64,000 nucleotides of DNA from Octopus bimaculoides (lineage: Eukaryota): positions 66,161,666-66,225,665 of the forward strand of contig NC_068992.1 in assembly GCF_001194135.2 (NCBI RefSeq), in the 5' to 3' direction. Both the position numbers and the translations under genes were made by a program. Under the pieces are notes generated by a model. That model searched no databases, was not told where the DNA came from, and saw nothing but the letters and a program-made list of their open reading frames with translations. Position 1 is the first letter of the stretch. Each line of letters begins with the position of its first letter. Shown here piece after piece: positions 1-40,800 of the stretch.

Positions 1-942
1 ACCAATTCCATCTTCATCCCTCGCAGACAATTAATCAAGCTGTATTGATGATCAATAAGTCTCTATAGACAGGTTCCACGAAGATTTCAATGACTGGAAC
101 TTTTATGAAACTCACTCAAATTAAAGATCGACAAATAAGAAATATTTTGGCTGAGATTTATTCTGGTCACACTTTTTTTTTTTTTTTGGTGAAAACTGAA
201 AATTCTAAAAGTAAAGAAAATAAATTCTTTACTTTTAAGCTTTAATTATTAACGAACCCTCGTGTGGAATCGTCAATAACGAACCTATATATTGTTTGAG
301 TTGCTTCCCAACAGAAATGAAACTTTCAGGCAGTTAAATGGAAGAATACTTTTGCACTGGTTTAGTTTCGGTCTTTTGAGTGTGGCCATGCTGCAGCACT
401 ACTTCGGTCAATCAAATCGATCCTAGAATTCACTTTTTAAATCTGGTATTTATTCTAAGCATTCTTATTTTTGCCCAACTATCAAGTTATGAGAATGTAA
501 ACAAACAAACACTGGTTGTTAAGGGGTATCCTACAAACACACAATACAAAGAGAGAAAAACACACACACACACATACACATCTACAAAATTCTCTTGCAA
601 GACAATGGTCATGTTGGGATACAGAAGGTGCCGCTCAGTGGAACTGAACTTCAGTTCCTGTTGTTTCAAAACAAAATTCTTAACCACCCAGCCAGCCATA
701 ACTTGCTCTTAGATAACACAGAATAATTCTACACAGAACTGGGGGTGGGGGGAATGATATTAATCAATGGCGAGAATAGAACGATAATTATATATACTGT
801 TAATTAACTTACAATAATATTTCTTTCCATTAATATAGATAAAATTTAATCAAACTTTGGTCATCTTTAATCTTTAACCCAGAAGCAACAAGAAATAAAA
901 GAGACCATTTTGGAAAGATAAGGGAGAATATAGTTTCCTTAC

Positions 943-1080
943 ATTCAATTTCTTGTCTTTGTCATCTTCCATAAAAGGAATCAGATAAGCGACAGCTTTC
1001 TTCATGACACGAGCAGACTTGATAACTTGTGGCAGAAACATTTTGCCAGAACCAAACAAATCTCCGACCGTGTTCATTCC
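943..1080 (-). CDS. MTR: MTR exon 21 (last in window)
   Basis: [46 protein letters not shown]; 138 nt, donor AT|GTAAGG. Confidence 0.93.
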
Positions 1081-3067
1081 CTGGAAACAAAAAAAAAAAA
1101 AAACAGATCTAACAATACTGTGAAATATGGGTTTCAAATTTTGGCACAAGGCCAGCAATTTAAGGGAAGCAAATAAGTTGATTACATTGACCCCCAGGGC
1201 CCAACTGGTTCTTATTTTATCCATCTTGAAAGAATGAAAGGCTAAGTCAGGCCCAGCGGCATTCAAAGACGGAATGTGAAGACAGACGATGCACCGTTAA
1301 GCGCTTTGCCCTGTGCACCAACAACCCTGCCACAGCTTGCTGCCTTAAAATACTATGGAATATTATTATGAGAATAACAACACTGGAACCAAATACTATA
1401 TTTGTGGCACTCGATCGGTTACGATAACGAGGGTTCCACTTGATCCGATCAATTGAACAGCCTGCTCATGGAATTAACAAGGAAGTGACTGAGTACTCCA
1501 CAGACACGTATGTCCTTAACATAGTTCTTGGGGGAGATTCAGCATGACACAGAGTGTGACAAGGCTGGTCCCTTTGAAATACAGGTATAAGAGAAACATG
1601 AAGAAAGAGTGAGACAAAGTTGTGATGAATGGGTACAGCAGGGTTCACCACCGCCCCCTGCCAGAGCCTCGTGGAACTTTAACTCTGAGACGAGCATTGC
1701 CGATTCCCTTTCTAGAAACTTTGAGTTGTTTTCCTGCCAATGGCTTTGAGAACAATAAAACTGACAGGTGCTTACCTTCATTAATGGCCCTTCAATTATC
1801 TTCAAAGGGATTGGATAAGCATCTACAGATTGGTGAGCTTCTTGCACGTCTTGGATGATGTATTTGTCAATTCCCTTCAAGACATACAAACAAAAAACAA
1901 TAAAATAAGCAAAAAAGAAACGAAAATTCCTTTTAAACAATAAAAATAAAATTCTATTTTTATTTCTATTAATATAGTTTATAAATATATTTATTTATTT
2001 GTTTATTTATTGAGTGGTGTTATATTTTATTGACCCCGAAGGGATGCAATGCAAAAATGATGTCAGCAGCATTTGAACTCAAAATGAAAATGGCTGAAAT
2101 AAATGCCAGAAAGCAATTTTAAAACACTAACAATTCCACAAATCTCTGAAGCCATCATCATCATCACACTACCACCACCATCACCATCATCATCATCATC
2201 ATCAGCTAGAGGTGTCATTAATATACCAGCTGCTCACTTCCCATGAACATTGTTTTTCAAGTCTCAAAGTCTTTGCAGAGATTCCTTTCACTGCCAATTA
2301 ATGCTGTTTTTTGGGGAGGTGGGGTATGTTCTCTATATTCAATTTTTATTCCAATCATTTCCAACCAATTTTTAATCTCTTTGATCACTGTACCAACAAT
2401 TATTGGCACAGTAAACACTGGTGGTGGTGGTGGTGGTGGTGGTGGTGTTGCTGCTGCTGCTGCTGCTGTTGTTGTTGATGTTATTATTATAGACTAATAG
2501 TTCAGTTGTTGAGTACAGTTTAGTTTGTTCGATAAAATAAAGTAATAAAGGGAAAATGACCTTCACAAGAGAGTAAATGAGACGCTCCTCCAGGGGCAAA
2601 TTTCGCCATTCTTCCTCTGTCACATTCTTCTTCGGAGTTTTATCCAACTTCTGTGGACAGACATGAGAAATATATGTGAATGTGTGTGTGTGTGTGTATG
2701 TGAGTGTGTGTGTGTGTATGTATGTGTGTGTGTGTGTGTGCATGTGGACATATGTACGTATGTATGTACATTACTAAAACTTTTATTTCTTGCCTTACCT
2801 CTGCATACATTAACATTTGTTCGGTGCCATCTGAAATAGTATTCCATATTATGCCTTCGCACAGATGAAGAAGATTTTCTTCAATATCCGAATACAATGG
2901 AAGATTGCCAGCATTGACAATTCCAAGATCCATTCCAGCCTTTCAAACAGAAAAACAACATCATGAAATTAATACACAAAAACAAACAAAAATAAACAGA
3001 AACAATTCAACACAGGCCATCATCATCATCATCATCAATTCATCACACACCCACTCCCACCATCACT

Positions 3068-3102
<35 letters not shown>

Positions 3103-6100
3103 TTAATGTCTCTGTTCTGTGCTGGCATGGAGTGGACCATTTTTGGCAATTTCCATCATCAACCATCTTTCACATGGAATGGTTACATTTGACTACAGAA
3201 AAAACCAATGTCTTTCAGACGAGTGAATTATGATTAATTAAATTTTCTGTTCATTTTGGAAATAAATTTTCTTTGATGTCTGCTCATTTTTCAGATTTCC
3301 CCATATTTTGTTTATTAGCTTTTTACAGTTGGTTTAAAACAATGTAGTCCTTAAATCCACATTCGGTATTTCCAGAATAAATTCATTTCTTGAAAATAAA
3401 ACTGCAAAGATCTGGAAACGTCAGAAAAGACTCAGGTAGCTCTACCAACTCAAAACAACTGCTACAAAAAACAATAAGAAAATATAGAAAAATCTACAAA
3501 ATAAAAGATAAAACTTTAACATAGTCATCATCATCATTTAACGTCCATGTCCTATGCTGGTATGGGTCAGATGGTTTGACAGGATCCAATAAGCCCAAAA
3601 GTTGCATCATAATTTAATCAAAGGTAAAGCTTCATGTGTTTATTATTACTAATTATTTTTAGGTGGTAAATTGGTTAAGTCGTTAGAGCACTGGGCTGAG
3701 TTCCTCATAGTTGTTTGTTGTGAATCTGAACAGTCCAAGATCAAATCATATTCAAAGGTGCAGGAGTGGTTGTGTGCTAAGTAGCTGGCTTCCCAACCAC
3801 ATGGTTCCGGGTTCATTCCCACTGTGTGGCACCTTGGGCAAGTGTCTTCTACTATAGCCTAGGGCCGACCAATGCCTTGTGAGTGGAGTTGGTAGACGAA
3901 AACTGAAAGAAGCCCGTTGTATATACGAGTGTGTGTGTGTGTGTGTGTGTGTCAAGGCGTGTGGCTTAGTGCTTGGATATTCTGCTCAGAATTATAAGGT
4001 TGTGAGTTCAATTCCCAACAGTGTGCCGTGTCTCTTGAGCAAGACACTTTATTTAACATTGTTCCGGTCCACTCACCTAGCAAAAGTGACCCATACCTGT
4101 ATTTCAAAGAACCAGCCGAGTCACATTCCGTGTGACGCTGAATCTCCCAAAGAACTACGTCAAGGGTTACATGTGTCTGTGCAATGCTCAGTGCCACTTT
4201 CATGCAGATTTCATAATCAGGCTGTTCCAATGACCGGATCAACTGGAACACTCGTTGTCATAACCGATGGAGTTCCAGTTTATGTTTTTCCCTATCTTTG
4301 TATTTGAAGCTGAGATTTCCTTTCACTATTACGCAGAGGTTTCCAAAGATTTCTGATTGCGTTAAGATTGAACTAAAGCCTCAAAGACAAGGTTAATTAG
4401 CCACAAAACCATTTTATTCTTAAAGTAGAAGAATCAGATATTTACCTTGATAGCATGATATAAAAACACACTGTGCATTGCTTCACGGATTTGGTTTTTA
4501 CCACGAAATGCAAAAGAAAGATTGGAAATCCCACCACTGATTTTGACACCAGCAAGATTTTGCTGCAAAATAATAATGATGATAATAATAGTAATAATAA
4601 TAATTATAATAATAATAGAATAGGAAGCCGGACATAGTTTTAATTGAGAAAGAAAGCAAACTATGCTGGATCATAGACATAACATGCCCAGCAGACAACA
4701 AGGTATGTAATAAGGAAGAAAGAAAAGTCGAGAGACATGACAGGTTAGCTTGGGACGTTAAGCAGTTATGGTTGATGAAAAAGGTGGCAGTAGTACCGAT
4801 AATTGTCGGGAACAGTGAGCAAAAATCTCGAGAAGTATGTGGAACAAATAGGGGCTGCAATAAGGGTGGTGGTGATGATGCAGACAGAAACACAAGAGAT
4901 TGCAGTCACGCATTCAATAAATCCACATTCTTCTAGAAAAAATCCAATTTATCTGAAACCATTACCAACCTTGACAATACTTGTGGCATTGATGAAATTT
5001 TTAACATAATCATTGTGTTCTTCTATTCCTGTAGCAATGGTCAGAATATTCAAATCAAAGATGATATTCTGGGGCAAGAGTTTAACCACTTCTGTAAGAA
5101 TTTTATATGATCGCTCACAGATCTCAACTTTTCTCTCAACACTGGTCGCCTGCATTAAAAATACAAATCAGTCGTTATTTTTATTGCTAATCAATCAACA
5201 GAGGTGGTGGAGGTGGCTGTGATGGCAGGGGGAGGGGAGGCTGATTATAGTGATGGTGGAGGTGGTGGTGGTGGTCGTCGTCATTGTAGTAGTAGTATGG
5301 GTGGTGGTGGTAAGAGTAGTGATTATATAGCTGTAACTGACTTTATCAATGGTAGTGGTGGGAGATGGTGATGATGAGGATGACAATAATGATGACGGTG
5401 ATGACGATGATGATGATAAGGATGATGGTGAAGATGATGATGATGACAATGATGATGGCGATGATAATGATGATGATGATGATGGCGATGATGATGTTGG
5501 TAGCTCAACTGCTCCTCACCTGACCTTCCTCATCAAAGCACATCACAATGACACAGGCGCCATACCGTTTGATGCACTTCGCTTTCTCTATGAAATCTTG
5601 CTCCCCCTCCTTCAGGCTGATACTGTTGACGATACACTTGCCCTGGCAACACTTGAGGCCAGCCTCGATCACAGAGAAACTGGACGAATCAACACAGAGG
5701 GGCACCTGGGGAAGAACAATCGCAATGACAATAATGATAATAATGACAAACGTAAGAGTAATAACAGTAACGATGGGAATAACAGTAATGATCGGAATAA
5801 CAAGAATGATCGGAATAACTAGAATGATCGGAATAACTAGAATGATGGGAATAACAGTAATGATGGGAATAACTGTAACGATCGGGATAACAAAAATGAT
5901 GGGAATAACTAAAATGATGGGAATAACTAAAATGATGGGAATAACTAAAATGATCGGGATAATTGTAATGATGGGAATAACTAATAATCCTTTCTATTAT
6001 AACCACAAGGCCTANNNNNNNNNNGTACTTGACTGGTACTTAAATTAATGACCCCAAGAGGATGAAAGACAAAATTGACCTCAGTGGAATTTGAACTCAG

Positions 6101-6755
6101 AACGTAAAGACAGATGGTGCAAACGATGGTGTTGGTTGTGTTGGTATTAATGGAATGGTTGTGATGGACATAGAATAACGTTACGACAACAACAACAACA
6201 ACTACAAGACTGTGCACTGAACCTTTGCAATATCAGGATCCGATGCAATGAAATTCACAAAAGTCGCCATTTCTTCCTCACTGTTGAGCAATCCTTCATC
6301 CATGTTGACATCAAGGATTTGTGCACCGTTGGCCACTTGGTCTTTGGCAACTGAAAGCGCATTCTGCAACAACATCAACACAATGAATATAAATTAAGTC
6401 ACAAATCAACAACAACAACAACATGAAGAAAATTTGAGCAAGAATCATCTTTCCCCATCCCTTGAAAATGCTAGCCCCATACCATAAATATATCTAGGCC
6501 TCACCTCATAATCTTGTTTCTTTATAAGATTCGAAAATCTCTTCGACCCAGCCACATTACATCTTTCCCCAATGTTAACAAAATTGGTGTAGGGTCCAAT
6601 GACCATCGGTTCCAAACCTAGAAATACAAATACAAAAACCAAAAACAGTGAAACAAAGCGAAATAAAAGAGAAGACAGCAACAACAACAATTAAAAGGTT
6701 AGCAGCAAAGTTTCCATATCTTGTTTCCTATGCTATTATAATAATATTTAGCAGA

Positions 6756-6795
<40 letters not shown>

Positions 6796-9700
6796 TAAAC
6801 TATTTCTTTCTTTATCTCAACCCAAAGTCTGTGTGCTGGTTGTCTTGGTATGCAAATTTTCAATATTTACATTTGAAATCATTATAAAACAGATTTATAC
6901 ATCAATATATCTTTTATTCCTGATATTCTTTTATTCTTTTGTTTGTTTGTTATTTGACTGCGGCCATGCTGGAGCACTGCCTTTAGTCGAGCAAATCGAC
7001 CCCAGGACTTATTCTTTGTAAGCCTAGTACTTATTCTATCGGTCTCTCTTGCCGAACCACCCTGTTGTCAAGCGATGCTGGGAGGACAAACACAGACACA
7101 CAAACATACACACACACACACACACAACAGACACATGCGCATGCACACACACAAACACATCTATGAACCCCTCACTGGAAATGTAAATAGAAACACCAGT
7201 CAACATACCTGATAGCTGTGTATATGAAGGGCTCAAGGGAATGGAACGCTGCCTTGGTGCTAAGCCTTTCATAGCCTCAGCAATGGCCCTGGATAATGAG
7301 ATAATTGCAAACTTTGTTACAGTTGGACTACACCATATATATTTATATATAAACTACAATGAACAACAGTGAACTCCAGTAAACAACAATGAACCACAAT
7401 GAACCACTGTATAAACTGAAGAATTATGGAACACCAATAAACACCAGAGAACCACTTCATTCTGCTTCACTGATTCTATGATAAAGATTATAAAGTTAAA
7501 ATAATGAGGTGACATCAAAAGAGAGCCCAAACCTTATGTGCGCAGGAGTCGAGCCACAACATCCTCCGATAATATTTACAAGTCCATCCTCAGCAAAAGA
7601 CTGAAAGACAAAACATACATCATTCATACATATTGGGTGTTTATATATATATATATATCATCATCATTATCATTGTCTAACATCCACCTTCCATGGTGGC
7701 ATGGGTTACATGTGTGCATGTGTGTGTGTGTGTGTGTACAGCAATGTAGAAAAACAGTGGCAGGATTTGGAGAGAGGTAGATTGAGATGTAGATAAAGAG
7801 AATGACCAGAGAATGTTAGGAAGATGATTGGAAGAGAGAAAGATGCACACATGCATGCACATGCACATAATATGAAGATATTAGAAGCACTGAAGAATTG
7901 TTTTAACAAATAAAAGATTGACTGTAAAAACAGAAAGTTATTGAAATAACTTTTAGGATTTGGTCTACATTTTTTTTTACCAAATTTGGAATCTATAATG
8001 ATAAATTATTAGATTGGTTGACTCCCAAATTAGTAAAAGATTACAAACCTTTAAGTTAGCTGCCATCATTTCTTCAGTCTCATCATATTCACCAAATGCA
8101 TTTGGTAAACCTTCACACAGATGAATTAAACAAATATTATATACACATTCATATTTATATATGTATATACATATGATGTATAAAATACAGAAAACTAGTA
8201 TGGTATTCAAAGCTTTATAGAACACACACTTGTTTCACCAAATTACTGTCATGATTACATAAATACTGAAACATTATATAAACAGGATTTTCTACACCTG
8301 AAGAATTTCAGTAATGGTCTGGAATTTGACAGTGTTGATAGCCCAGAACTCGGGTTGAGCACTTCTCTGGAAATACCCTACCTTTATACTCTTCTTGGAC
8401 ATAAGGTGTGTGTGTGTATACCAGAATAAGCACATAAATGTGAAACAAGATGGGAAAAATAGTACTCAAATACCAGAGGTAGAGTAATATGCTTTATCAA
8501 AAAGCAGCAAAAATATCACAAAAACTGTTACTCAGAGTTTCACGTTCCCGTTCATTGGACAGTTTTGTTTAGAACTCTAAACAAAACTGTCCAATGAACG
8601 GGAAGATGAAACTCTGAGTAACATCCAAATGGTGACAAAGGTGTATATTTGGGGGGGAGATCAATATTAACCACACCTGAACAGACTTACCTGCATTAGG
8701 GTAACAGATGACAAAAGCCTCAGAGTTTTTGGAAATGATTTCAATGAAGGGTCTCATAAGCTGGGCCCCTAAGGAACAGTTCAGCCCTAAACTGGGATTC
8801 AAGAAACAAAACAAAAACAATAAAATAAAGAAATACGTTAATACAAACAGGGTTAAGCAACCACAACAACTCAGTTATCAATTTTGTTGTTGTTGTTGTT
8901 GTATACAAGTGTGTCTATGAGGGGGTAATGAGGAGGGGGGAGGGCAGAAATGAGTTGCAAACATCTGATATTTACAATAAAAACGTCACCAAAGAGAGAG
9001 GGAGCCAAAAGAGGGTGGTGAACATCATTATAGTTGAAGACAGGGGATAAAGGGGGAAGGGAGGAGGAGAGATACAGACAGACAGAAAGTGAGATATATA
9101 GAGAGAAAATGGAGTAGAGAGAAAGAGAGAGACAATGGGGTCGAGAGAGAGAAAGAGAGATAGAAAAAGAGAATGAGAATGGTTAGAGAGAGAGAGAGGG
9201 GGGAAAGGAAGTGAGAGAGAGAAAGAGGGAGAAAGAAGAATGTTGGAATGGTGTTGGGAAAAGAAGGAAGATAAGAACGAAGAAGAAGAAGAAGAGAAGG
9301 AAATAATCTTACCACATTGGATTGGTGTGAGATACGCTAATCATGAAGGCTTCTGTTGTTTGTCCTGATAATGTCCGACCACTCAAGTCAACAATGGTAC
9401 CACTTACCTGAAGAAAGGAATCACAAGTTTACAATTCTGAGATAAACTTCCAAAATTAGGAATTCTTTGTTTTTAGAAAATTGGGGCAAAGTTTCTTGGC
9501 CCAAAACACAAATAAATATATATTCAAGATCCATATTCACTGTGCTCAATGGTGAACAAGATATCTTGCCAACCATGAAGTAGCAGGTTCAATTCCAAGA
9601 AGAAGCAAGACTGGGTCAGTGTTTTTATCACAGTTTCAGGTTGATTAAGGCAATGCAGGTAAAACTGGGGTAAATGGATTCTGTTATAGAAACCTGTTGA

Positions 9701-26083: not shown

Positions 26084-26470
26084 CTGGAAAATATGAAACA
26101 ATAGGGATACATTAAAACATTACTATTTTTAAATCTCATCACAACAAGAGAGATATTCACCAACAGTACTTTGGAGTAAAGACTGTTTGCCAACATAACA
26201 TGGCAGTCCTGGTCTAGGACGAATGTTGCTGTAATTTAGCTGAGTGGGGGTGCTAGATTCCCTTGTTTGAAAATATAAGGACACAAATCGTGTTGTATAG
26301 CCAGCTGGAGACAATGTCTCCTGGGGCTAAATTACAGTAACATTTGTCCTAAACCAGGACTGCCATGTTATATTGGTAAACAGTCTTTACTCCAATAGGG
26401 AGACATATATATATAACAAAATGGATATGTAACAATGTGAATATATACATATAACAAGCTGGAAATAAAT

Positions 26471-35816: not shown

Positions 35817-37617
35817 TGATGGGTTTTTTCAGTTTCTATCTTACCAAACTTCATTCATAAAGTATTGTTCAGTCTACGGCTATGGCAGAGGTCACCAGCT
35901 GACAGCATCAACAGAGCAGGAGTGAGCCCCAAATCATGTAGTTCTGAAATAAACCAGTTAACCCCAACACAGCCATGCCACATATGCCCTACACTGAACA
36001 ACAACAGCATGATAGACTAAATATTTGATAAACTTACATAGTCTTTATTCTCGTCTTTGACGCTAGTTGTGCCCCAGAGTCCATTCACACCATCAACAGC
36101 TACCAGGACACGATGTCTGTGGAGAGATAAATGCAATCTGAATTATATACACACACACACACACACAATCCATAAACATACATACTATCTTCTCTCTCTC
36201 CCACACACAGGTATATAATTTGACACCTGCATATATACACAACTAGTCACCTAAACTTGACACTTGCATATGTGTGTGTATAATGTATTTATCATCATCA
36301 TCATCGTTAAACGTCTGTTTTCCATGATGGCATAGGTTGGACGGTCCCCGAGTCAGTCAGGTGGCACTGGCATCGACCACATTCGGATGGTGCTTTTTAT
36401 GTGACACAAGACACATCCATTTAATCATACACAGTGTCTGCCACAAACCACGTACATTAGTACACGTCACACACACACAACTGGGAGACCCACAATTCAC
36501 TGTTGGCATAATCGCATAATGTCTGCAATGATAAAATATTTTTAATGTGTTTCACAATGTTGCTTACTTCTTCTCAGAAGCTGATTTCTTTACTTCTTTC
36601 AGAATAATCCCCACAGCATCACTGGCATATCTTGGTCTTGCTAAACCCTGGAATTATAAATAAAAAGTCAAATGAAAAAAAAAAAAAAAAAAACCTAAAT
36701 AGAGACTTGGAATAAAGTAAATGACATTTGACATTACAGGTAGAAACTAACTTTTTTGGTTTTTGTTCGAGGAGGAGGAATGATAGCAGCACTGAACATT
36801 TTCAAAACCTCCAAGAATGATGGGAGGAAGTTATCCTCAGATCAAATATCTGGTCATAATTCAGGGAACAAAATGGATTCTTCAACTGAAGCTACCTAAG
36901 AGTCAAGTGTTGGAGAGAAACTGGTCGACAGAATATATCCCCAGCCTCAAACCTTTCCGTTAGATTCTCACACACTTTCCATCAACTACATTTCACTCAA
37001 GACATTAACTGACCTAAGGCTGTAGTAGAAGATACTTGTCCAAGGTGCCACACATTGGGATTGGATCCTAAACCTCAGGTGAACACCTTAACCCCACAGC
37101 TATGCCTGTGCCCATACTGACTGCACTGTTACCCTTTTTCAACCTCTCCAAATTGGGGCAGATAATATTTAATACTATTTAAATGAAATTCAAAACCTTA
37201 GCAGGTGATCCCTCAAAAGATTTCAAGGAACAAAGAAGAATAGTTGAATGTATTTTAATTTCCATTTGAAAAACATATTACAATAAAAATAAAGATAATC
37301 ATTATAATATATAAATAAATATATATATGGAGTAAAGATTGTTTGCCAACATAACATGGCAGTCCTGGTTTAGGACAAATGTTGCTGGAATTTAGCCCCA
37401 GGAGGCACAGAACACAATGAATCAAGAAGTGCTGCAATGCATTTGGTCCGATGTGCTATCGATTTTACCAGCTTGCCACCTTAATTATAATAAGTGGAGT
37501 TTTGGTTTAGGGAAAGAGAAATGAAGAAGTAGAACTATTCTTATCAAGTAGTCATAAAGGTTCCTAATTTCAGCACAAGAGCACAAACGCCAATTCAATT
37601 TGTAAGTATTTACTTTT

Positions 37618-37653
<36 letters not shown>

Positions 37654-37836
37654 GTGTGTGTGCGTGACATTAGTTTGACAAATCTAGAAGTTAGTTTCAA
37701 TTCCCTGGAACCAAATCTCAGTCCCATATCACATTATTATTACACTTTATCTTAAGATAAGATAATTCCCTAGAATCAAATCTCAGATTTGATTCCAGGG
37801 AATTGAAACTAACTTCTAGATTTGTCAAACTAATGT

Positions 37837-37868
<32 letters not shown>

Positions 37869-40800
37869 AATACTTACAAATTGAATTAATTCAGATAACG
37901 TAGTTCCTTCTTCAGCAGATTCTCGTTTACTCCAGATATACTTTGAGGTAGTCTGAAAAATATATAAACACAATCACATTATAAATATATATACATACAC
38001 TCACAGACATATACACACATATAAAATGCATATACACATAACATATTGTGGACGGACACACACACATGTACATTACATATAAATTTATACACAGACACAC
38101 ATAACATATTGTAGACACATACACATTACACACAAACACATATATATGTATATATATAAATATATACACATATGTACATTACATATGCACACACGTAACA
38201 GAGAGAGAGAGAGAGAGAGAGAGATACAGGCAGACAAAAGGAAAACATATGTACAGCATTAAAAAAACTTCTCACTGTCTCAGATTTCCTTCTGCAGCTC
38301 AGCCTCTCCACAAACAAAATAAAAAATAAAAACAGAAAATATATAAAAACACCCACATCTGTTCTCTATACAAAGTCATATTCCATTTCTCTGCATGTTG
38401 ATGCAACCAGATAAAAAAATAATAAAACTCCCTCCACCGAAACCTAAGTCAGCTCCTCACTGCTAGGGATATGTAGTGTCACAACGACCAAACGGATAAT
38501 TACTGGTATGGCACCAAGCAGCATTGCCTTCGTGACAAACTGACAGAATTACAGGAATGTAAACGAGATAAAGCATAGGCTTGCTGGTTTGGAATCTTGG
38601 TCAGATGCAACTTTGGTTTTTAACTAATTAATGATTTCAAATTTTGGCACAAGGCCAGCAATTTCAGGGAAGGGCATGCGTCAATAACATCAACCCCACC
38701 GCTTAACTGGTACTTTTTTTGTCGATCCCAAAGGGACGAATGGTAAAGCCGACCTTGGTGGAATTTGATCTCAGTACATAAAGACGAAACGCCAGTAAGC
38801 ATTTTGGCCATGGTGCCAATGATTCTACTGGCTCACCATCTGATTTAACAAAGTAATAAAAACATTTTTATGAAGGAGCATCGCTTAGTGGTTAGGGTGT
38901 TCAGCTCGCAATTGTAAGACCAAGAGTTCAATTCCTGGTGGAGTGCTATTAAGGAACTAGCAGAGAAGCTTGGATTTGGTCATTCCACCATTCATCGACA
39001 CCTGCCTGCGTGTCAGTCAGAAAATTGGATCAATAAAAATGTCAAACACTGAAGACAGTGGGTAGCAGGAGAAACACCAGCACCCCAGGCTAAAGAAGGT
39101 CTTCACCCAGGTCAGGTGTTGTTATCTGTTTGGTGGGATATGAAAGGTTTAGTCCACTTTGAACTTTTAAACCCAAATCAAATGATAACAAAGGAGATCC
39201 ACTGCAAGCAGCTTGAGCGGCTTCAGTCAGCGCTAGAATAGAGANNNNNNNNNNNNNNNNNNNNNNNNNNNNNNNNNNNNNNNNNNNNNNNNNNNNNNNN
39301 NNNNNNNNNNNNGAGAGAGAGAGAGAGGGAGAGGGAGAGAGAAAATTCTCATACCTTTATATCCTGTAGAAATTCTTCGTTCTGACTCTTGAACAATTTC
39401 AACCAATCCACTGCTATGAGAGGGAAGTCAATTTGACCTGGTTTATATGTTGACATAGAGATTTCTCGCCAAGCCTTTTTCCACATTGATGCTGAAAAAC
39501 AATGTTGATAATTTCTTATGTTGGCTGAAGGCAACAAATTCTTGAGTAGTGGGGGGTGGGGGGGTGGCTCATGGTTGGAGAACTGATCCCAGTAATTCAT
39601 TACCATTTGTTATTTTATCAATCCGGTTGAGATTTGAACACGGAACAATAACAAAATACCAATATTTGATCTGGCATTCTCCTATTTCTGCTGCACCACC
39701 ACAACAAACAGTTTCATAGGTACAAGGCCAGATATTTGTTAAGAGGGGACAGGTGATTACATCGACCCCTGTAATTAACTGATACATTACTTTACCTATC
39801 CTTTAAGAATGAAAGGTAAAGTTAATTTTGGTGGAATGTGAACTCAAAACTTAAAGGGCTAAGTTATAAACACCACAAGGTATTTTGTTTAGTATTCAGT
39901 TCTAATAATAATAATAATCCTTTCTACTGTAGGCACAAGGCCTGATTTTTCTCTGGGGAGGAGCGAGTTAATTATATCACCCCCAGTTGGTTATATTGAC
40001 CAACTTGTACCTATTTTATTCACTACATCAGCCTCAGTAGAATTTGAAATCACAACGCAAAGACAGACAAAAGGCTGCTAACAACTCTGCCAGCTTCCTG
40101 CCCAATCTAAAAAATGGTGGAAACATGAATTAAAGAGACTTTGTTGGTCAGGAAGTGGACAAAGTGGATTACTTAACTGCCAAGTGCCCAATATAGGTCA
40201 AACTTCGTGTGTGTGTGCGCGCGCGTGCGTGCGTGTGCATAACTATAGTTGAAATTTACAGAAAAACAAAAGACGAAGACAGGTGTATAAACAAGCAGGT
40301 GCATTAGTCTGATGCTCGGGAAGGTGAGAAAGTCTTTTATATTTCGAGCCTATGCTCTTCAACAGAAAGGACACGAGGAAATAAACAGAGAGAGAATAAA
40401 GAAAACTTGTGGATTTAGCGGTCATTCATGCGCACACATATACGTACACTCATGTATAAAGAAAAGAGTATTCAATACATGTGGACGTTAAATATTTGTA
40501 TTAACAGTTTGACTTAGATAAGCAATTACTACAAGTTTCAAATATACTAAAGTATGTCTGATTACTTGAATTCAATAACAGCGAGTTGTAAGGCTGTCGT
40601 GGGTTCTAAATAAGGTTAAATATCATTGGATGATAATGAAGAAGGCTCTTATTAGATAGTTTGGATGATGTGGTGAAGTATGTAATTTGACAAGGTGCTA
40701 GTGTCAGACAGCTGCTGGATGGGAGGCAACTCTGGCACAATAGATAGCAGCAATATCTTGCTTTCAGTGGAAATTCCAGCAGCAAAATTTAAAATTTTGG

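What the first reader, a model, noticed from the sequence alone, without database searches (positions are those of the whole stretch)
37592..37887. Intronic fold-back that base-pairs the DAP3 exon 6 5' splice site (candidate editing-complementary sequence)
Seen: in the DAP3 pre-mRNA the last 10 exonic nt plus the donor (AATTCAATTT|GTAAGTATTTA, 21 nt) have a perfect antisense copy ~280 nt into the intron. The duplex continues through (TG)n/(CA)n and a 55-bp stem with one mismatch; a small inner palindrome (37764-37804) marks the turn-around. Known: intronic exon-complementary sequences direct ADAR editing (GRIA2 Q/R paradigm), stems can mask 5' splice sites, and coleoids edit RNA heavily. Inference: the stem could slow or block exon 6 splicing, or recode ATT/CAA (Ile to Val, Gln to Arg). 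Arm differences (CTTTTGGG spacer, unequal repeat length) argue against a simple assembly echo.
Basis: partly seen in the sequence, partly recalled or inferred. Interest (0 to 1): 0.72.

Follow-up and report, generated by a model that had tools for sequence, protein, structure and literature searches.

The report
Octopus DAP3 intron hairpin masking splice donor
In the Octopus bimaculoides assembly, about 130 bases spanning the end of DAP3 exon 6 and the start of its intron are repeated backwards 280 bases downstream, so the transcript should fold into a long hairpin that buries the splice donor; the copy is specific to this species, looks like a by-product of a small DNA rearrangement rather than an evolved editing element, and still needs confirmation from raw reads.

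Summary
AATTCAATTT|GTAAGTATTTA occurs twice in the window, in opposite orientation (37867-37887 minus, 37592-37612 plus). The complementarity continues through (GT)13/(TG)23.5 and a 53-57 bp block with one mismatch. The 302-nt RNA folds at -169 kcal/mol with 104 inter-arm pairs. P(unpaired) of the 5' splice site is 0.001, against 0.4-0.7 in controls and orthologues.

The window is O. bimaculoides chromosome CM046612.1. DAP3 (mS29) lies on the minus strand, and the exon is coding exon 6 (37878-37952).

O. vulgaris has a single forward copy of the block. O. sinensis and Argonauta have none, and the antisense 21-mer occurs only in O. bimaculoides. The distal inverted arm keeps the ancestral downstream continuation (TCCCATATCACATT). 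The proximal arm keeps the exon.

This fits a young micro-inversion with an inverted duplication at its breakpoint, not a transposon and not a conserved editing-complementary sequence. Differences between the arms argue against a simple assembly echo. The assembly is short-read based, however, and I could reach no independent reads, so I put an artefact at about 0.2.

The most likely consequence is an intronic ADAR hyper-editing substrate with incidental editing of exon and donor. Any effect on splicing is unproven. Interest is modest.

The parts
37878..37952 (-). DAP3 (mS29) coding exon 6. It is 75 nt, phase 0-0, and encodes [25 protein letters not shown].
   Evidence: tblastn and translation. 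It matches XP_014791383.1 and is 98.7% identical to the O. sinensis and O. vulgaris exon.
37872..37880 (-). 5' splice site, positions -3 to +6 (TTT|GTAAGT). It lies entirely inside the terminal 21-bp helix.
   Evidence: P(unpaired) is 0.001 in the wild type and 0.39-0.56 with the distal arm deleted or shuffled. The helix is -22.4 kcal/mol; modelled U1 pairing is -7.3 kcal/mol.
37782..37887 (-). Proximal arm: the last 10 exonic nt, donor, TATATAT, (GT)13 and the 57-nt block. It is still attached to the exon.
   Evidence: It is 97% identical to O. vulgaris L003:49617-49684 in the forward orientation.
37764..37804 (.). Inner palindrome (20-nt arms, one mismatch, 1-nt centre at 37784). Here the ancestral homology of the proximal arm ends and folds back.
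   Evidence: I23. The three-way alignment shows the proximal arm leaving the O. vulgaris sequence after CAAATCT.
37722..37763 (+). Inverted central segment. It begins with TCCCATATCACATT, the ancestral continuation of the block, in the orientation opposite to the gene. It forms the imperfect apical part of the hairpin.
   Evidence: O. vulgaris reads ...CAAATCTCGGTCCCGTATCACATT in the forward orientation. blastn matches window 37735-37651 to L003 49701-49617 in reverse.
37592..37721 (+). Distal arm: an inverted duplicate of 10 exonic nt, donor, CTTTTGGG, (TG)23.5 and the 57-nt block. It reads as antisense in the pre-mRNA.
   Evidence: It is found only in O. bimaculoides among the four octopod loci.
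37183..37591 (-). An O. bimaculoides-specific tract between the distal arm and the conserved 3' part of the intron. It contains a half-copy of a MITE-like element at 37328-37407. Junction J1 lies at 37591|37592.
   Evidence: It has no collinear orthologue in O. vulgaris or O. sinensis. The MITE homology is shown.
36648..37877 (-). DAP3 intron 6 (1230 nt). Its 3' 560-610 nt are collinear with O. vulgaris and O. sinensis at 90-93% identity.
36568..36647 (-). DAP3 exon 7 ([27 protein letters not shown]).

Best explanation
This is a real, evolutionarily young rearrangement in the O. bimaculoides lineage.

Origin. The ancestral order was exon end, then B (10 exonic nt, donor, (TG)n and the 57-bp block), then C (TCCCATATCACATT...). 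A segment of about 170 bp at the very start of DAP3 intron 6 was inverted, and B was duplicated at the breakpoint. The order is now exon-B-[20-nt fold-back]-rcC-rcB. This pattern is expected from a micro-inversion with staggered breaks, or from replication template switching.

Consequence, inferred and not shown. The pre-mRNA carries a hairpin of about 300 nt with 104 inter-arm base pairs. Its last helix contains the final 10 exonic nucleotides and the GUAAGU donor. In an animal with very active ADARs this should be a promiscuous hyper-editing substrate. Most editing would fall in the intron. Incidental editing could reach A37886 (I to V), A37882 (Q to R) and donor positions +3 and +4.

Splicing. 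U1 can probably bind co-transcriptionally before the distal arm is made, and editing or helicases would loosen the helix. I therefore expect splicing to be slowed at most.

Overall, the structure is a near-neutral by-product of DNA rearrangement, not a selected editing or splicing element.
For: Shown:
- The two arms are the only copies in the window, and the fold is extreme.
- O. vulgaris has one forward copy of (TG)n and the block. That copy continues as the distal arm does.
- O. sinensis and Argonauta lack the block. The antisense 19-mer is found only in O. bimaculoides.
- Both arms share two states against O. vulgaris (TCTAGAAG versus TCTTGAAG; TTTCAATT versus TTTCAGTT). They differ from each other by one substitution, the spacer and the microsatellite length. 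This means the duplication came after the species split and the arms then diverged a little.
- The block is not a dispersed repeat in about 250 kb of octopod DAP3 loci.
- The 5' splice site is fully paired only when the distal arm is present.
- The annotated protein uses this donor, so the exon is spliced.

Context:
- Nearby inverted copies are the conventional source of long dsRNA editing substrates across metazoans, octopus included (PMC9989829).
Against: - The assembly is short-read based and gap-rich. There are nine N runs in the window, and GCA_001194135.2 has 713,915 contigs (PMC10700109).
- Both arms abut microsatellites, where such assemblies break and are later gap-filled.
- No independent O. 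bimaculoides reads or assembly could be reached. L001 is the same assembly as the window.
- Nothing here measures editing or splicing.
- The near-neutral verdict rests on lack of conservation and on general knowledge of co-transcriptional U1 recruitment. It does not rest on data from this gene.
Confidence: 0.55

Rival explanations
1. Assembly artefact. The true intron has a single forward copy, and the inverted arm is a misplaced allelic or gap-fill fragment or a chimeric fold-back.
For: - The source is a short-read scaffold assembly with many gaps.
- The arms are bounded by (TG)n/(CA)n, where contigs typically break.
- The differences between the arms (one SNP, microsatellite length, a short indel block) are of the kind seen between alleles.
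- No independent confirmation is available.
Against: - It needs two false junctions without Ns: 37591|37592 and the centre at 37784.
- The distal copy stops exactly 10 nt into the exon instead of continuing into it, as an allele would.
- A de Bruijn fold-back would give identical arms, and these are not identical.
- The nearest N run is 1.4 kb away.
- Comparable intronic fold-backs occur in the long-read assemblies of O. sinensis and O. vulgaris.
Confidence: 0.22
2. Functional cis element. The distal arm acts as an ECS that directs recoding (I to V, Q to R), or as a 5'-splice-site mask that tunes exon 6 inclusion or intron retention, for example with temperature.
For: - The duplex includes exonic adenosines and the whole donor.
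- P(unpaired) of the donor drops from about 0.5 to 0.001.
- Exon 6 is 75 nt and in frame. Intron retention meets a stop after 14 codons.
- The Q position varies among cephalopods (Q, E or K).
- Human DAP3 represses A-to-I editing (PMC7299630), so a feedback loop is conceivable.
Against: - It is not conserved in the closest sequenced relatives.
- Its origin as a raw duplicate, with 104 near-perfect pairs, predicts promiscuous rather than site-selective editing.
- There is no DAP3/S29 entry in the searchable part of the octopus recoding table, although the table is truncated.
- No paper links octopus DAP3 to editing.
Confidence: 0.12
3. Transposable element. The fold-back is a MITE or foldback transposon inserted next to the exon.
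For: - MITE-like fold-backs are frequent in these introns.
- A MITE half-copy lies 185 nt from the distal arm.
Against: - The arms are single-copy locus sequence. They include 10 nt of a conserved exon and its donor.
- O. vulgaris carries one arm in place rather than an empty site.
- The flanks (…CAAACGCC / AATTCAGAT…) show no target-site duplication.
Confidence: 0.03

Closest known systems
Exon-intron editing duplexes with an intronic ECS (GRIA2 Q/R site; Drosophila Syt1 and other ECSs)
   Same: An intronic sequence a few hundred nt downstream pairs with the end of the exon, which places exonic adenosines in dsRNA. A Q-to-R change is possible.
   Different: ECSs are conserved, imperfect and site-selective (PMC5705066). 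This arm is species-specific. It is a raw inverted duplicate with 104 near-perfect pairs, and no editing has been shown.
Inverted-repeat dsRNA in introns and UTRs (for example inverted Alu pairs) as ADAR hyper-editing substrates
   Same: Two nearby copies in opposite orientation lie within one transcript. The duplex is long, young and nearly perfect, and it meets the BLAST criterion of at least 50 nt at 80% or more used for octopus and 21 other species (PMC9989829).
   Different: The arms are not transposon copies. They are unique gene sequence, and one arm is the functional exon-intron junction itself.
5' splice-site-sequestering stems (MAPT exon 10 stem-loop, SMN2 exon 7 TSL2; from my own knowledge)
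   Same: Donor positions -3 to +6 are base-paired and compete with U1.
   Different: Those are short local stems next to the donor and are conserved. Here the complement lies about 255 nt away at the base of a very long helix, so co-transcriptional U1 binding may come first.
Inversions flanked by inverted duplications (staggered-break model described for Drosophila inversions; from my own knowledge), and hairpin RNA or young MIR loci born by inverted duplication
   Same: A segment that is single-copy and forward in the outgroup appears inverted, and one end is duplicated as an inverted repeat.
   Different: The scale is tiny (about 170 bp). It lies inside an intron and includes a splice donor. 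No small-RNA function is indicated, because the Rfam hits are sub-threshold generic long hairpins.

Membership tests
Intronic editing-complementary sequence (ECS) | An intronic sequence complementary to exonic sequence around an adenosine | tested here: met
   A perfect 21-bp helix covers 10 exonic nt, including A37887, A37886, A37882 and A37881.
Intronic editing-complementary sequence (ECS) | The duplex is conserved across related species | tested here: not met
   The distal arm is absent from O. vulgaris, O. sinensis and Argonauta hians.
Intronic editing-complementary sequence (ECS) | Documented A-to-I editing at the paired exonic site | tested here: inconclusive
   The stored octopus recoding table of PMC9989829 has no S29/DAP3 entry, but the file is truncated. 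No paper links octopus DAP3 to editing. No RNA-seq is available here.
Intronic editing-complementary sequence (ECS) | Editing is lost when the ECS is mutated | not testable with these tools
   This needs a minigene or genome editing.
Inverted-repeat hyper-editing substrate | A reverse-complement match of at least 50 nt and at least 80% identity within about 2 kb in the same transcript | tested here: met
   Arms of 97 nt at 89% and 51 nt at 92%. The self-BLAST match is 228 nt at 81.6% including the microsatellite length difference.
Inverted-repeat hyper-editing substrate | The arms are copies of a repetitive element | tested here: not met
   There are only two copies in the window. There is one orthologous copy in O. 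vulgaris and none elsewhere in four loci.
Inverted-repeat hyper-editing substrate | Clustered A-to-G mismatches in RNA | not testable with these tools
   No reads are available.
5' splice-site-masking stem | Donor positions -3 to +6 are paired in a stable structure | tested here: met
   P(unpaired) is 0.001, against 0.39-0.69 in deletion and shuffle controls and in orthologues. This is in silico and at equilibrium only.
5' splice-site-masking stem | The structure changes splice-site use | not testable with these tools
   This needs RNA-seq or a minigene. The annotated protein shows that the donor is used.
MITE / foldback transposon | A multi-copy family with terminal inverted repeats and a target-site duplication, and an empty site in relatives | tested here: not met
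   The arms are single-copy and contain exon sequence. There is no flanking direct repeat. O. vulgaris has one arm in place.
Inversion with breakpoint inverted duplication | The segment is inverted relative to the outgroup, and the flanking inverted repeat is single-copy in the outgroup | tested here: met
   Window 37735-37651 matches L003 49701-49617 in reverse, and window 37852-37785 matches L003 49617-49684 forward. See also the three-way alignment.
Inversion with breakpoint inverted duplication | The junctions are confirmed in independent sequence data from the same species | not testable with these tools
   Exact ORF look-ups, a peptide search and a metagenome scan all returned nothing.

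The most novel reading that the evidence does not exclude
O. bimaculoides acquired a self-derived ECS and splice-site mask by duplicating its own exon-intron junction. DAP3 exon 6 would then be recoded (I to V, Q to R) or conditionally skipped or retained in a way that depends on ADAR or temperature. O. vulgaris and O. sinensis would serve as natural controls that lack the arm. Because human DAP3 represses ADAR editing (PMC7299630), this could form a feedback loop between editing and DAP3 output.
Probability: 0.08. Interest if true: 0.6.

Novelty: new member of a known kind. Interest (0 to 1): 0.3.

Why it matters
If the arm is real, it is a clean natural experiment. An essential mitoribosomal gene has its splice donor locked in a 104-bp RNA duplex in one octopus species, while two close relatives lack the arm. 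Comparing editing and splicing of exon 6 across these species would show how a heavily editing animal handles a newly arisen dsRNA at a splice site. It would also show how exon-intron editing duplexes can start, by local inverted duplication. If the arm is an artefact, it marks a type of misassembly at microsatellites in the O. bimaculoides reference. That type could generate false dsRNA or ECS predictions in editing studies that use this genome.

Tried and rejected
- Independent O. bimaculoides sequence. I made exact look-ups of the two ORFs that span the junctions, a homology search with concatenated junction-spanning peptides and an exact scan of metagenome contigs for junction J1. All returned nothing. 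The only O. bimaculoides locus retrieved (L001) is the same assembly as the window.
- Known RNA families. Rfam gave only sub-threshold matches to plant long-hairpin MIR models and similar (best 90.6 bits against a gathering score of 245). These are generic hairpin matches.
- Transposon origin. Rejected because the arms are single-copy and contain exon sequence.
- Ancestral fold-back lost in relatives. Rejected because O. vulgaris carries B-C forward, while O. bimaculoides has C only in reverse. Deletion alone cannot convert one arrangement into the other.
- Literature. The Albertin 2015 genome paper is not held, so I could not verify the assembler or the heterozygosity. No paper links octopus DAP3 to editing. 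The recoding-site table is truncated.
- Argonauta as an outgroup to polarise substitutions. Its intron cannot be aligned.
Full report
**1. What is there**

The window is Octopus bimaculoides chromosome record CM046612.1 of assembly GCA_001194135.2. The locus fetched for the annotated DAP3 protein is base-for-base identical to the minus strand of the window. Window x corresponds to record x + 66,161,665.

DAP3 (mitoribosomal protein mS29, Pfam PF10236) lies on the minus strand. Its exons were mapped by tblastn and splice-site inspection at about 49775, 46358, 44278, 39504, 37952-37878, 36647-36568, 36119, 34083, 28541 and 26084. With the first coding exon near 60.7-60.9 kb, the exon in question is coding exon 6. 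It is 75 nt, phase 0-0, encodes [25 protein letters not shown] and is followed by GTAAGT. The RefSeq protein reads ...ELIQF|GLARP..., so this donor is used.

**2.

- The 21-mer AATTCAATTT|GTAAGTATTTA occurs at 37867-37887 on the gene strand and at 37592-37612 on the opposite strand. These are the only two copies in 64 kb, with none expected by chance.
- Beyond the 21-mer the arms carry a 7-8-nt unlike spacer (TATATAT versus CTTTTGGG). Next come (GT)13 versus (TG)23.5 with two interruptions, and then a 53-57-nt block with one mismatch.
- A 41-nt inner palindrome lies at 37764-37804.
- The 302-nt RNA folds to -169.1 kcal/mol with 104 inter-arm pairs, 6 of them G.U.
- A 391-nt context folds with z = -20 against shuffles.

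**3. What it is**

I fetched the orthologous loci of O. sinensis (L002, long-read assembly), O. vulgaris (L003, long-read assembly) and Argonauta hians (L004) through their DAP3 proteins.

- O. vulgaris has exon 6 and GTAAGTATT, then a dispersed SINE-like insertion of about 317 bp (10 or more copies in the window). After that comes a single forward copy of (TG)n and the block. It continues ...CAAATCTCGGTCCCGTATCACATT before a 1-kb LINE/SINE insertion.
- In O. bimaculoides that continuation (TCCCATATCACATT) is attached to the distal arm, in the orientation opposite to the gene. The proximal arm leaves the ancestral sequence after CAAATCT and runs into the inner palindrome.
- O. sinensis and Argonauta lack the block. 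The antisense copy of the junction is found only in O. bimaculoides.
- The two O. bimaculoides arms share two states against O. vulgaris. They differ from each other by one substitution plus the spacer and microsatellite changes.
- Collinear homology with the relatives resumes at window 37182/37131 and runs to exon 7 at 90-93% identity.

The simplest history starts from exon-B-C and ends at exon-B-[20-nt fold-back]-rcC-rcB. This is a micro-inversion of about 170 bp with the B segment duplicated at the breakpoint, after the split from the O. vulgaris/O. sinensis lineage. The outer boundary of the duplication (37887|37888) falls at the centre of a 10-nt palindrome in the exon, GAATT|AATTC. Three copies of a 23-nt motif surround the centre (D6 and I23). 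Both features suggest a hairpin-prone site and replication template switching or staggered breaks. That last step is inference.

**4. What it is not**

- It is not a transposon. The arms are single-copy and include conserved exon sequence. There is no target-site duplication, and O. vulgaris has one arm in place.
- It is not a known RNA family.
- It is not a conserved ECS. ECSs are recognised by conservation together with pairing to conserved edited sites (PMC5705066).

**5. Real or artefact**

The assembly is short-read based and fragmented. There are nine N runs in the window and 713,915 contigs genome-wide (PMC10700109). The arms abut microsatellites. I could reach no independent O. bimaculoides data.

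Several points argue against an artefact:
- The arms are not identical.
- The distal copy ends 10 nt into the exon instead of continuing as an allele would.
- Two N-free false junctions would be required.
- Similar intronic fold-backs exist in the long-read assemblies of the relatives.

I put an artefact at about 0.2.

**6. How it most likely works**

Shown in silico:
- The donor (-3 to +6) has P(unpaired) of 0.001 in O. bimaculoides.
- With the distal arm deleted or shuffled the value is 0.39-0.56. It is 0.69 in O. vulgaris and 0.51 in O. sinensis.
- The terminal 21-bp helix is -22.4 kcal/mol. An 8-bp U1-type pairing is -7.3 kcal/mol.

Inferred from established knowledge:
- Long near-perfect dsRNA made by nearby inverted copies is the standard ADAR hyper-editing substrate in metazoans, octopus included (PMC9989829). 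I therefore expect clustered intronic A-to-I changes.
- Incidental editing is possible at A37886 (I to V), A37882 (Q to R), the silent sites A37887 and A37881, and donor positions +3 and +4.
- The complement of the donor is the last part of the hairpin to be transcribed, about 280 nt later. U1 can engage first, and editing or helicases would weaken the helix. The exon is evidently spliced.
- If masking did bite, skipping of exon 6 would remove 25 conserved residues in frame. Intron retention would hit a stop after 14 codons.

Given the lack of conservation, I read the structure as a near-neutral by-product, not a selected regulator (confidence 0.55). A functional ECS or splice switch keeps about 0.1.

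**7. Novelty and interest**

This is a new instance of a known kind, an intronic inverted-repeat dsRNA. Its unusual feature is that one arm is the working exon-intron junction. It offers a natural three-species comparison for how a new dsRNA at a donor is tolerated. It is also a cautionary case for dsRNA and ECS predictions made on this reference. Human DAP3 is a reported repressor of A-to-I editing (PMC7299630). This is a curiosity and not evidence. Interest: 0.3.

Noticed in passing
window 26171-26395; L002:52471-52692; L003:64088-64329; half-copy at window 37328-37407: A MITE-like fold-back (70-80-nt arms, 93% complementary, GGAGTAAAGACTGTTTGCC... termini) lies in the last DAP3 intron, about 90 nt upstream of the final exon. 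It is conserved at the orthologous place in all three Octopus species. A single half-copy sits inside the O. bimaculoides-specific tract of intron 6.
   Followed up: partly
L003:49300-49616 and L002:39241-~39520: O. vulgaris and O. sinensis carry a dispersed SINE-like insertion (10 or more copies in the window) only 9 nt downstream of the exon 6 donor, right after GTAAGTATT. O. vulgaris also has a 1-kb LINE/SINE insertion after the block, and O. sinensis has lost the block. The first few hundred nt of this intron have therefore been remodelled independently in each lineage.
   Followed up: partly
window 37883-37892: The outer boundary of the inverted duplication (37887|37888) coincides with the centre of a perfect 10-nt palindrome in the exon, GAATT|AATTC. 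This may be the site of a break or of a template switch.
   Followed up: no
window 37567-37607 (+): On the strand opposite to the gene, the distal arm creates an exon-like unit: tttcag|CACAAGAGCACAAACGCCAATTCAATTT|GTAAGT. This is a 28-nt pseudo-exon with a copied donor, and it matters only if the region is transcribed antisense.
   Followed up: no
window 44620-45001: Another intronic fold-back lies in DAP3, between the exons ending at 46245 and starting at 44278. It has 158-nt arms, 87% complementary, with 66 nt between them. Similar large fold-backs are present in L002 and L003 (for example L002:41940-42506 and L003:53098-53664).
   Followed up: no
window 8526-8623: A near-perfect palindrome (48-nt arms, 96% complementary, 2-nt spacer) lies just downstream, on the minus strand, of a methionine-synthase-like exon.
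   Followed up: no
window 874-8820 (-): The neighbouring gene on the minus strand encodes a methionine synthase-like protein. Its exons hit Pfam B12-binding_2 (E = 4.6e-13) and S-methyl_trans (E = 4.4e-6).
   Followed up: partly
window 37620-37666 and 37837-37862: The (GU)n:(CA)n part of the hairpin is an alternating purine-pyrimidine duplex of about 26 bp. Such tracts are prone to the Z conformation, which could matter for an ADAR1 with a Z-binding domain. This is speculation from general knowledge.
   Followed up: no
literature (PMC7299630): Human DAP3 is reported to bind ADARs and repress A-to-I editing in cancer cells. It is curious that the octopus DAP3 pre-mRNA carries a strong predicted ADAR substrate.
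   Followed up: no
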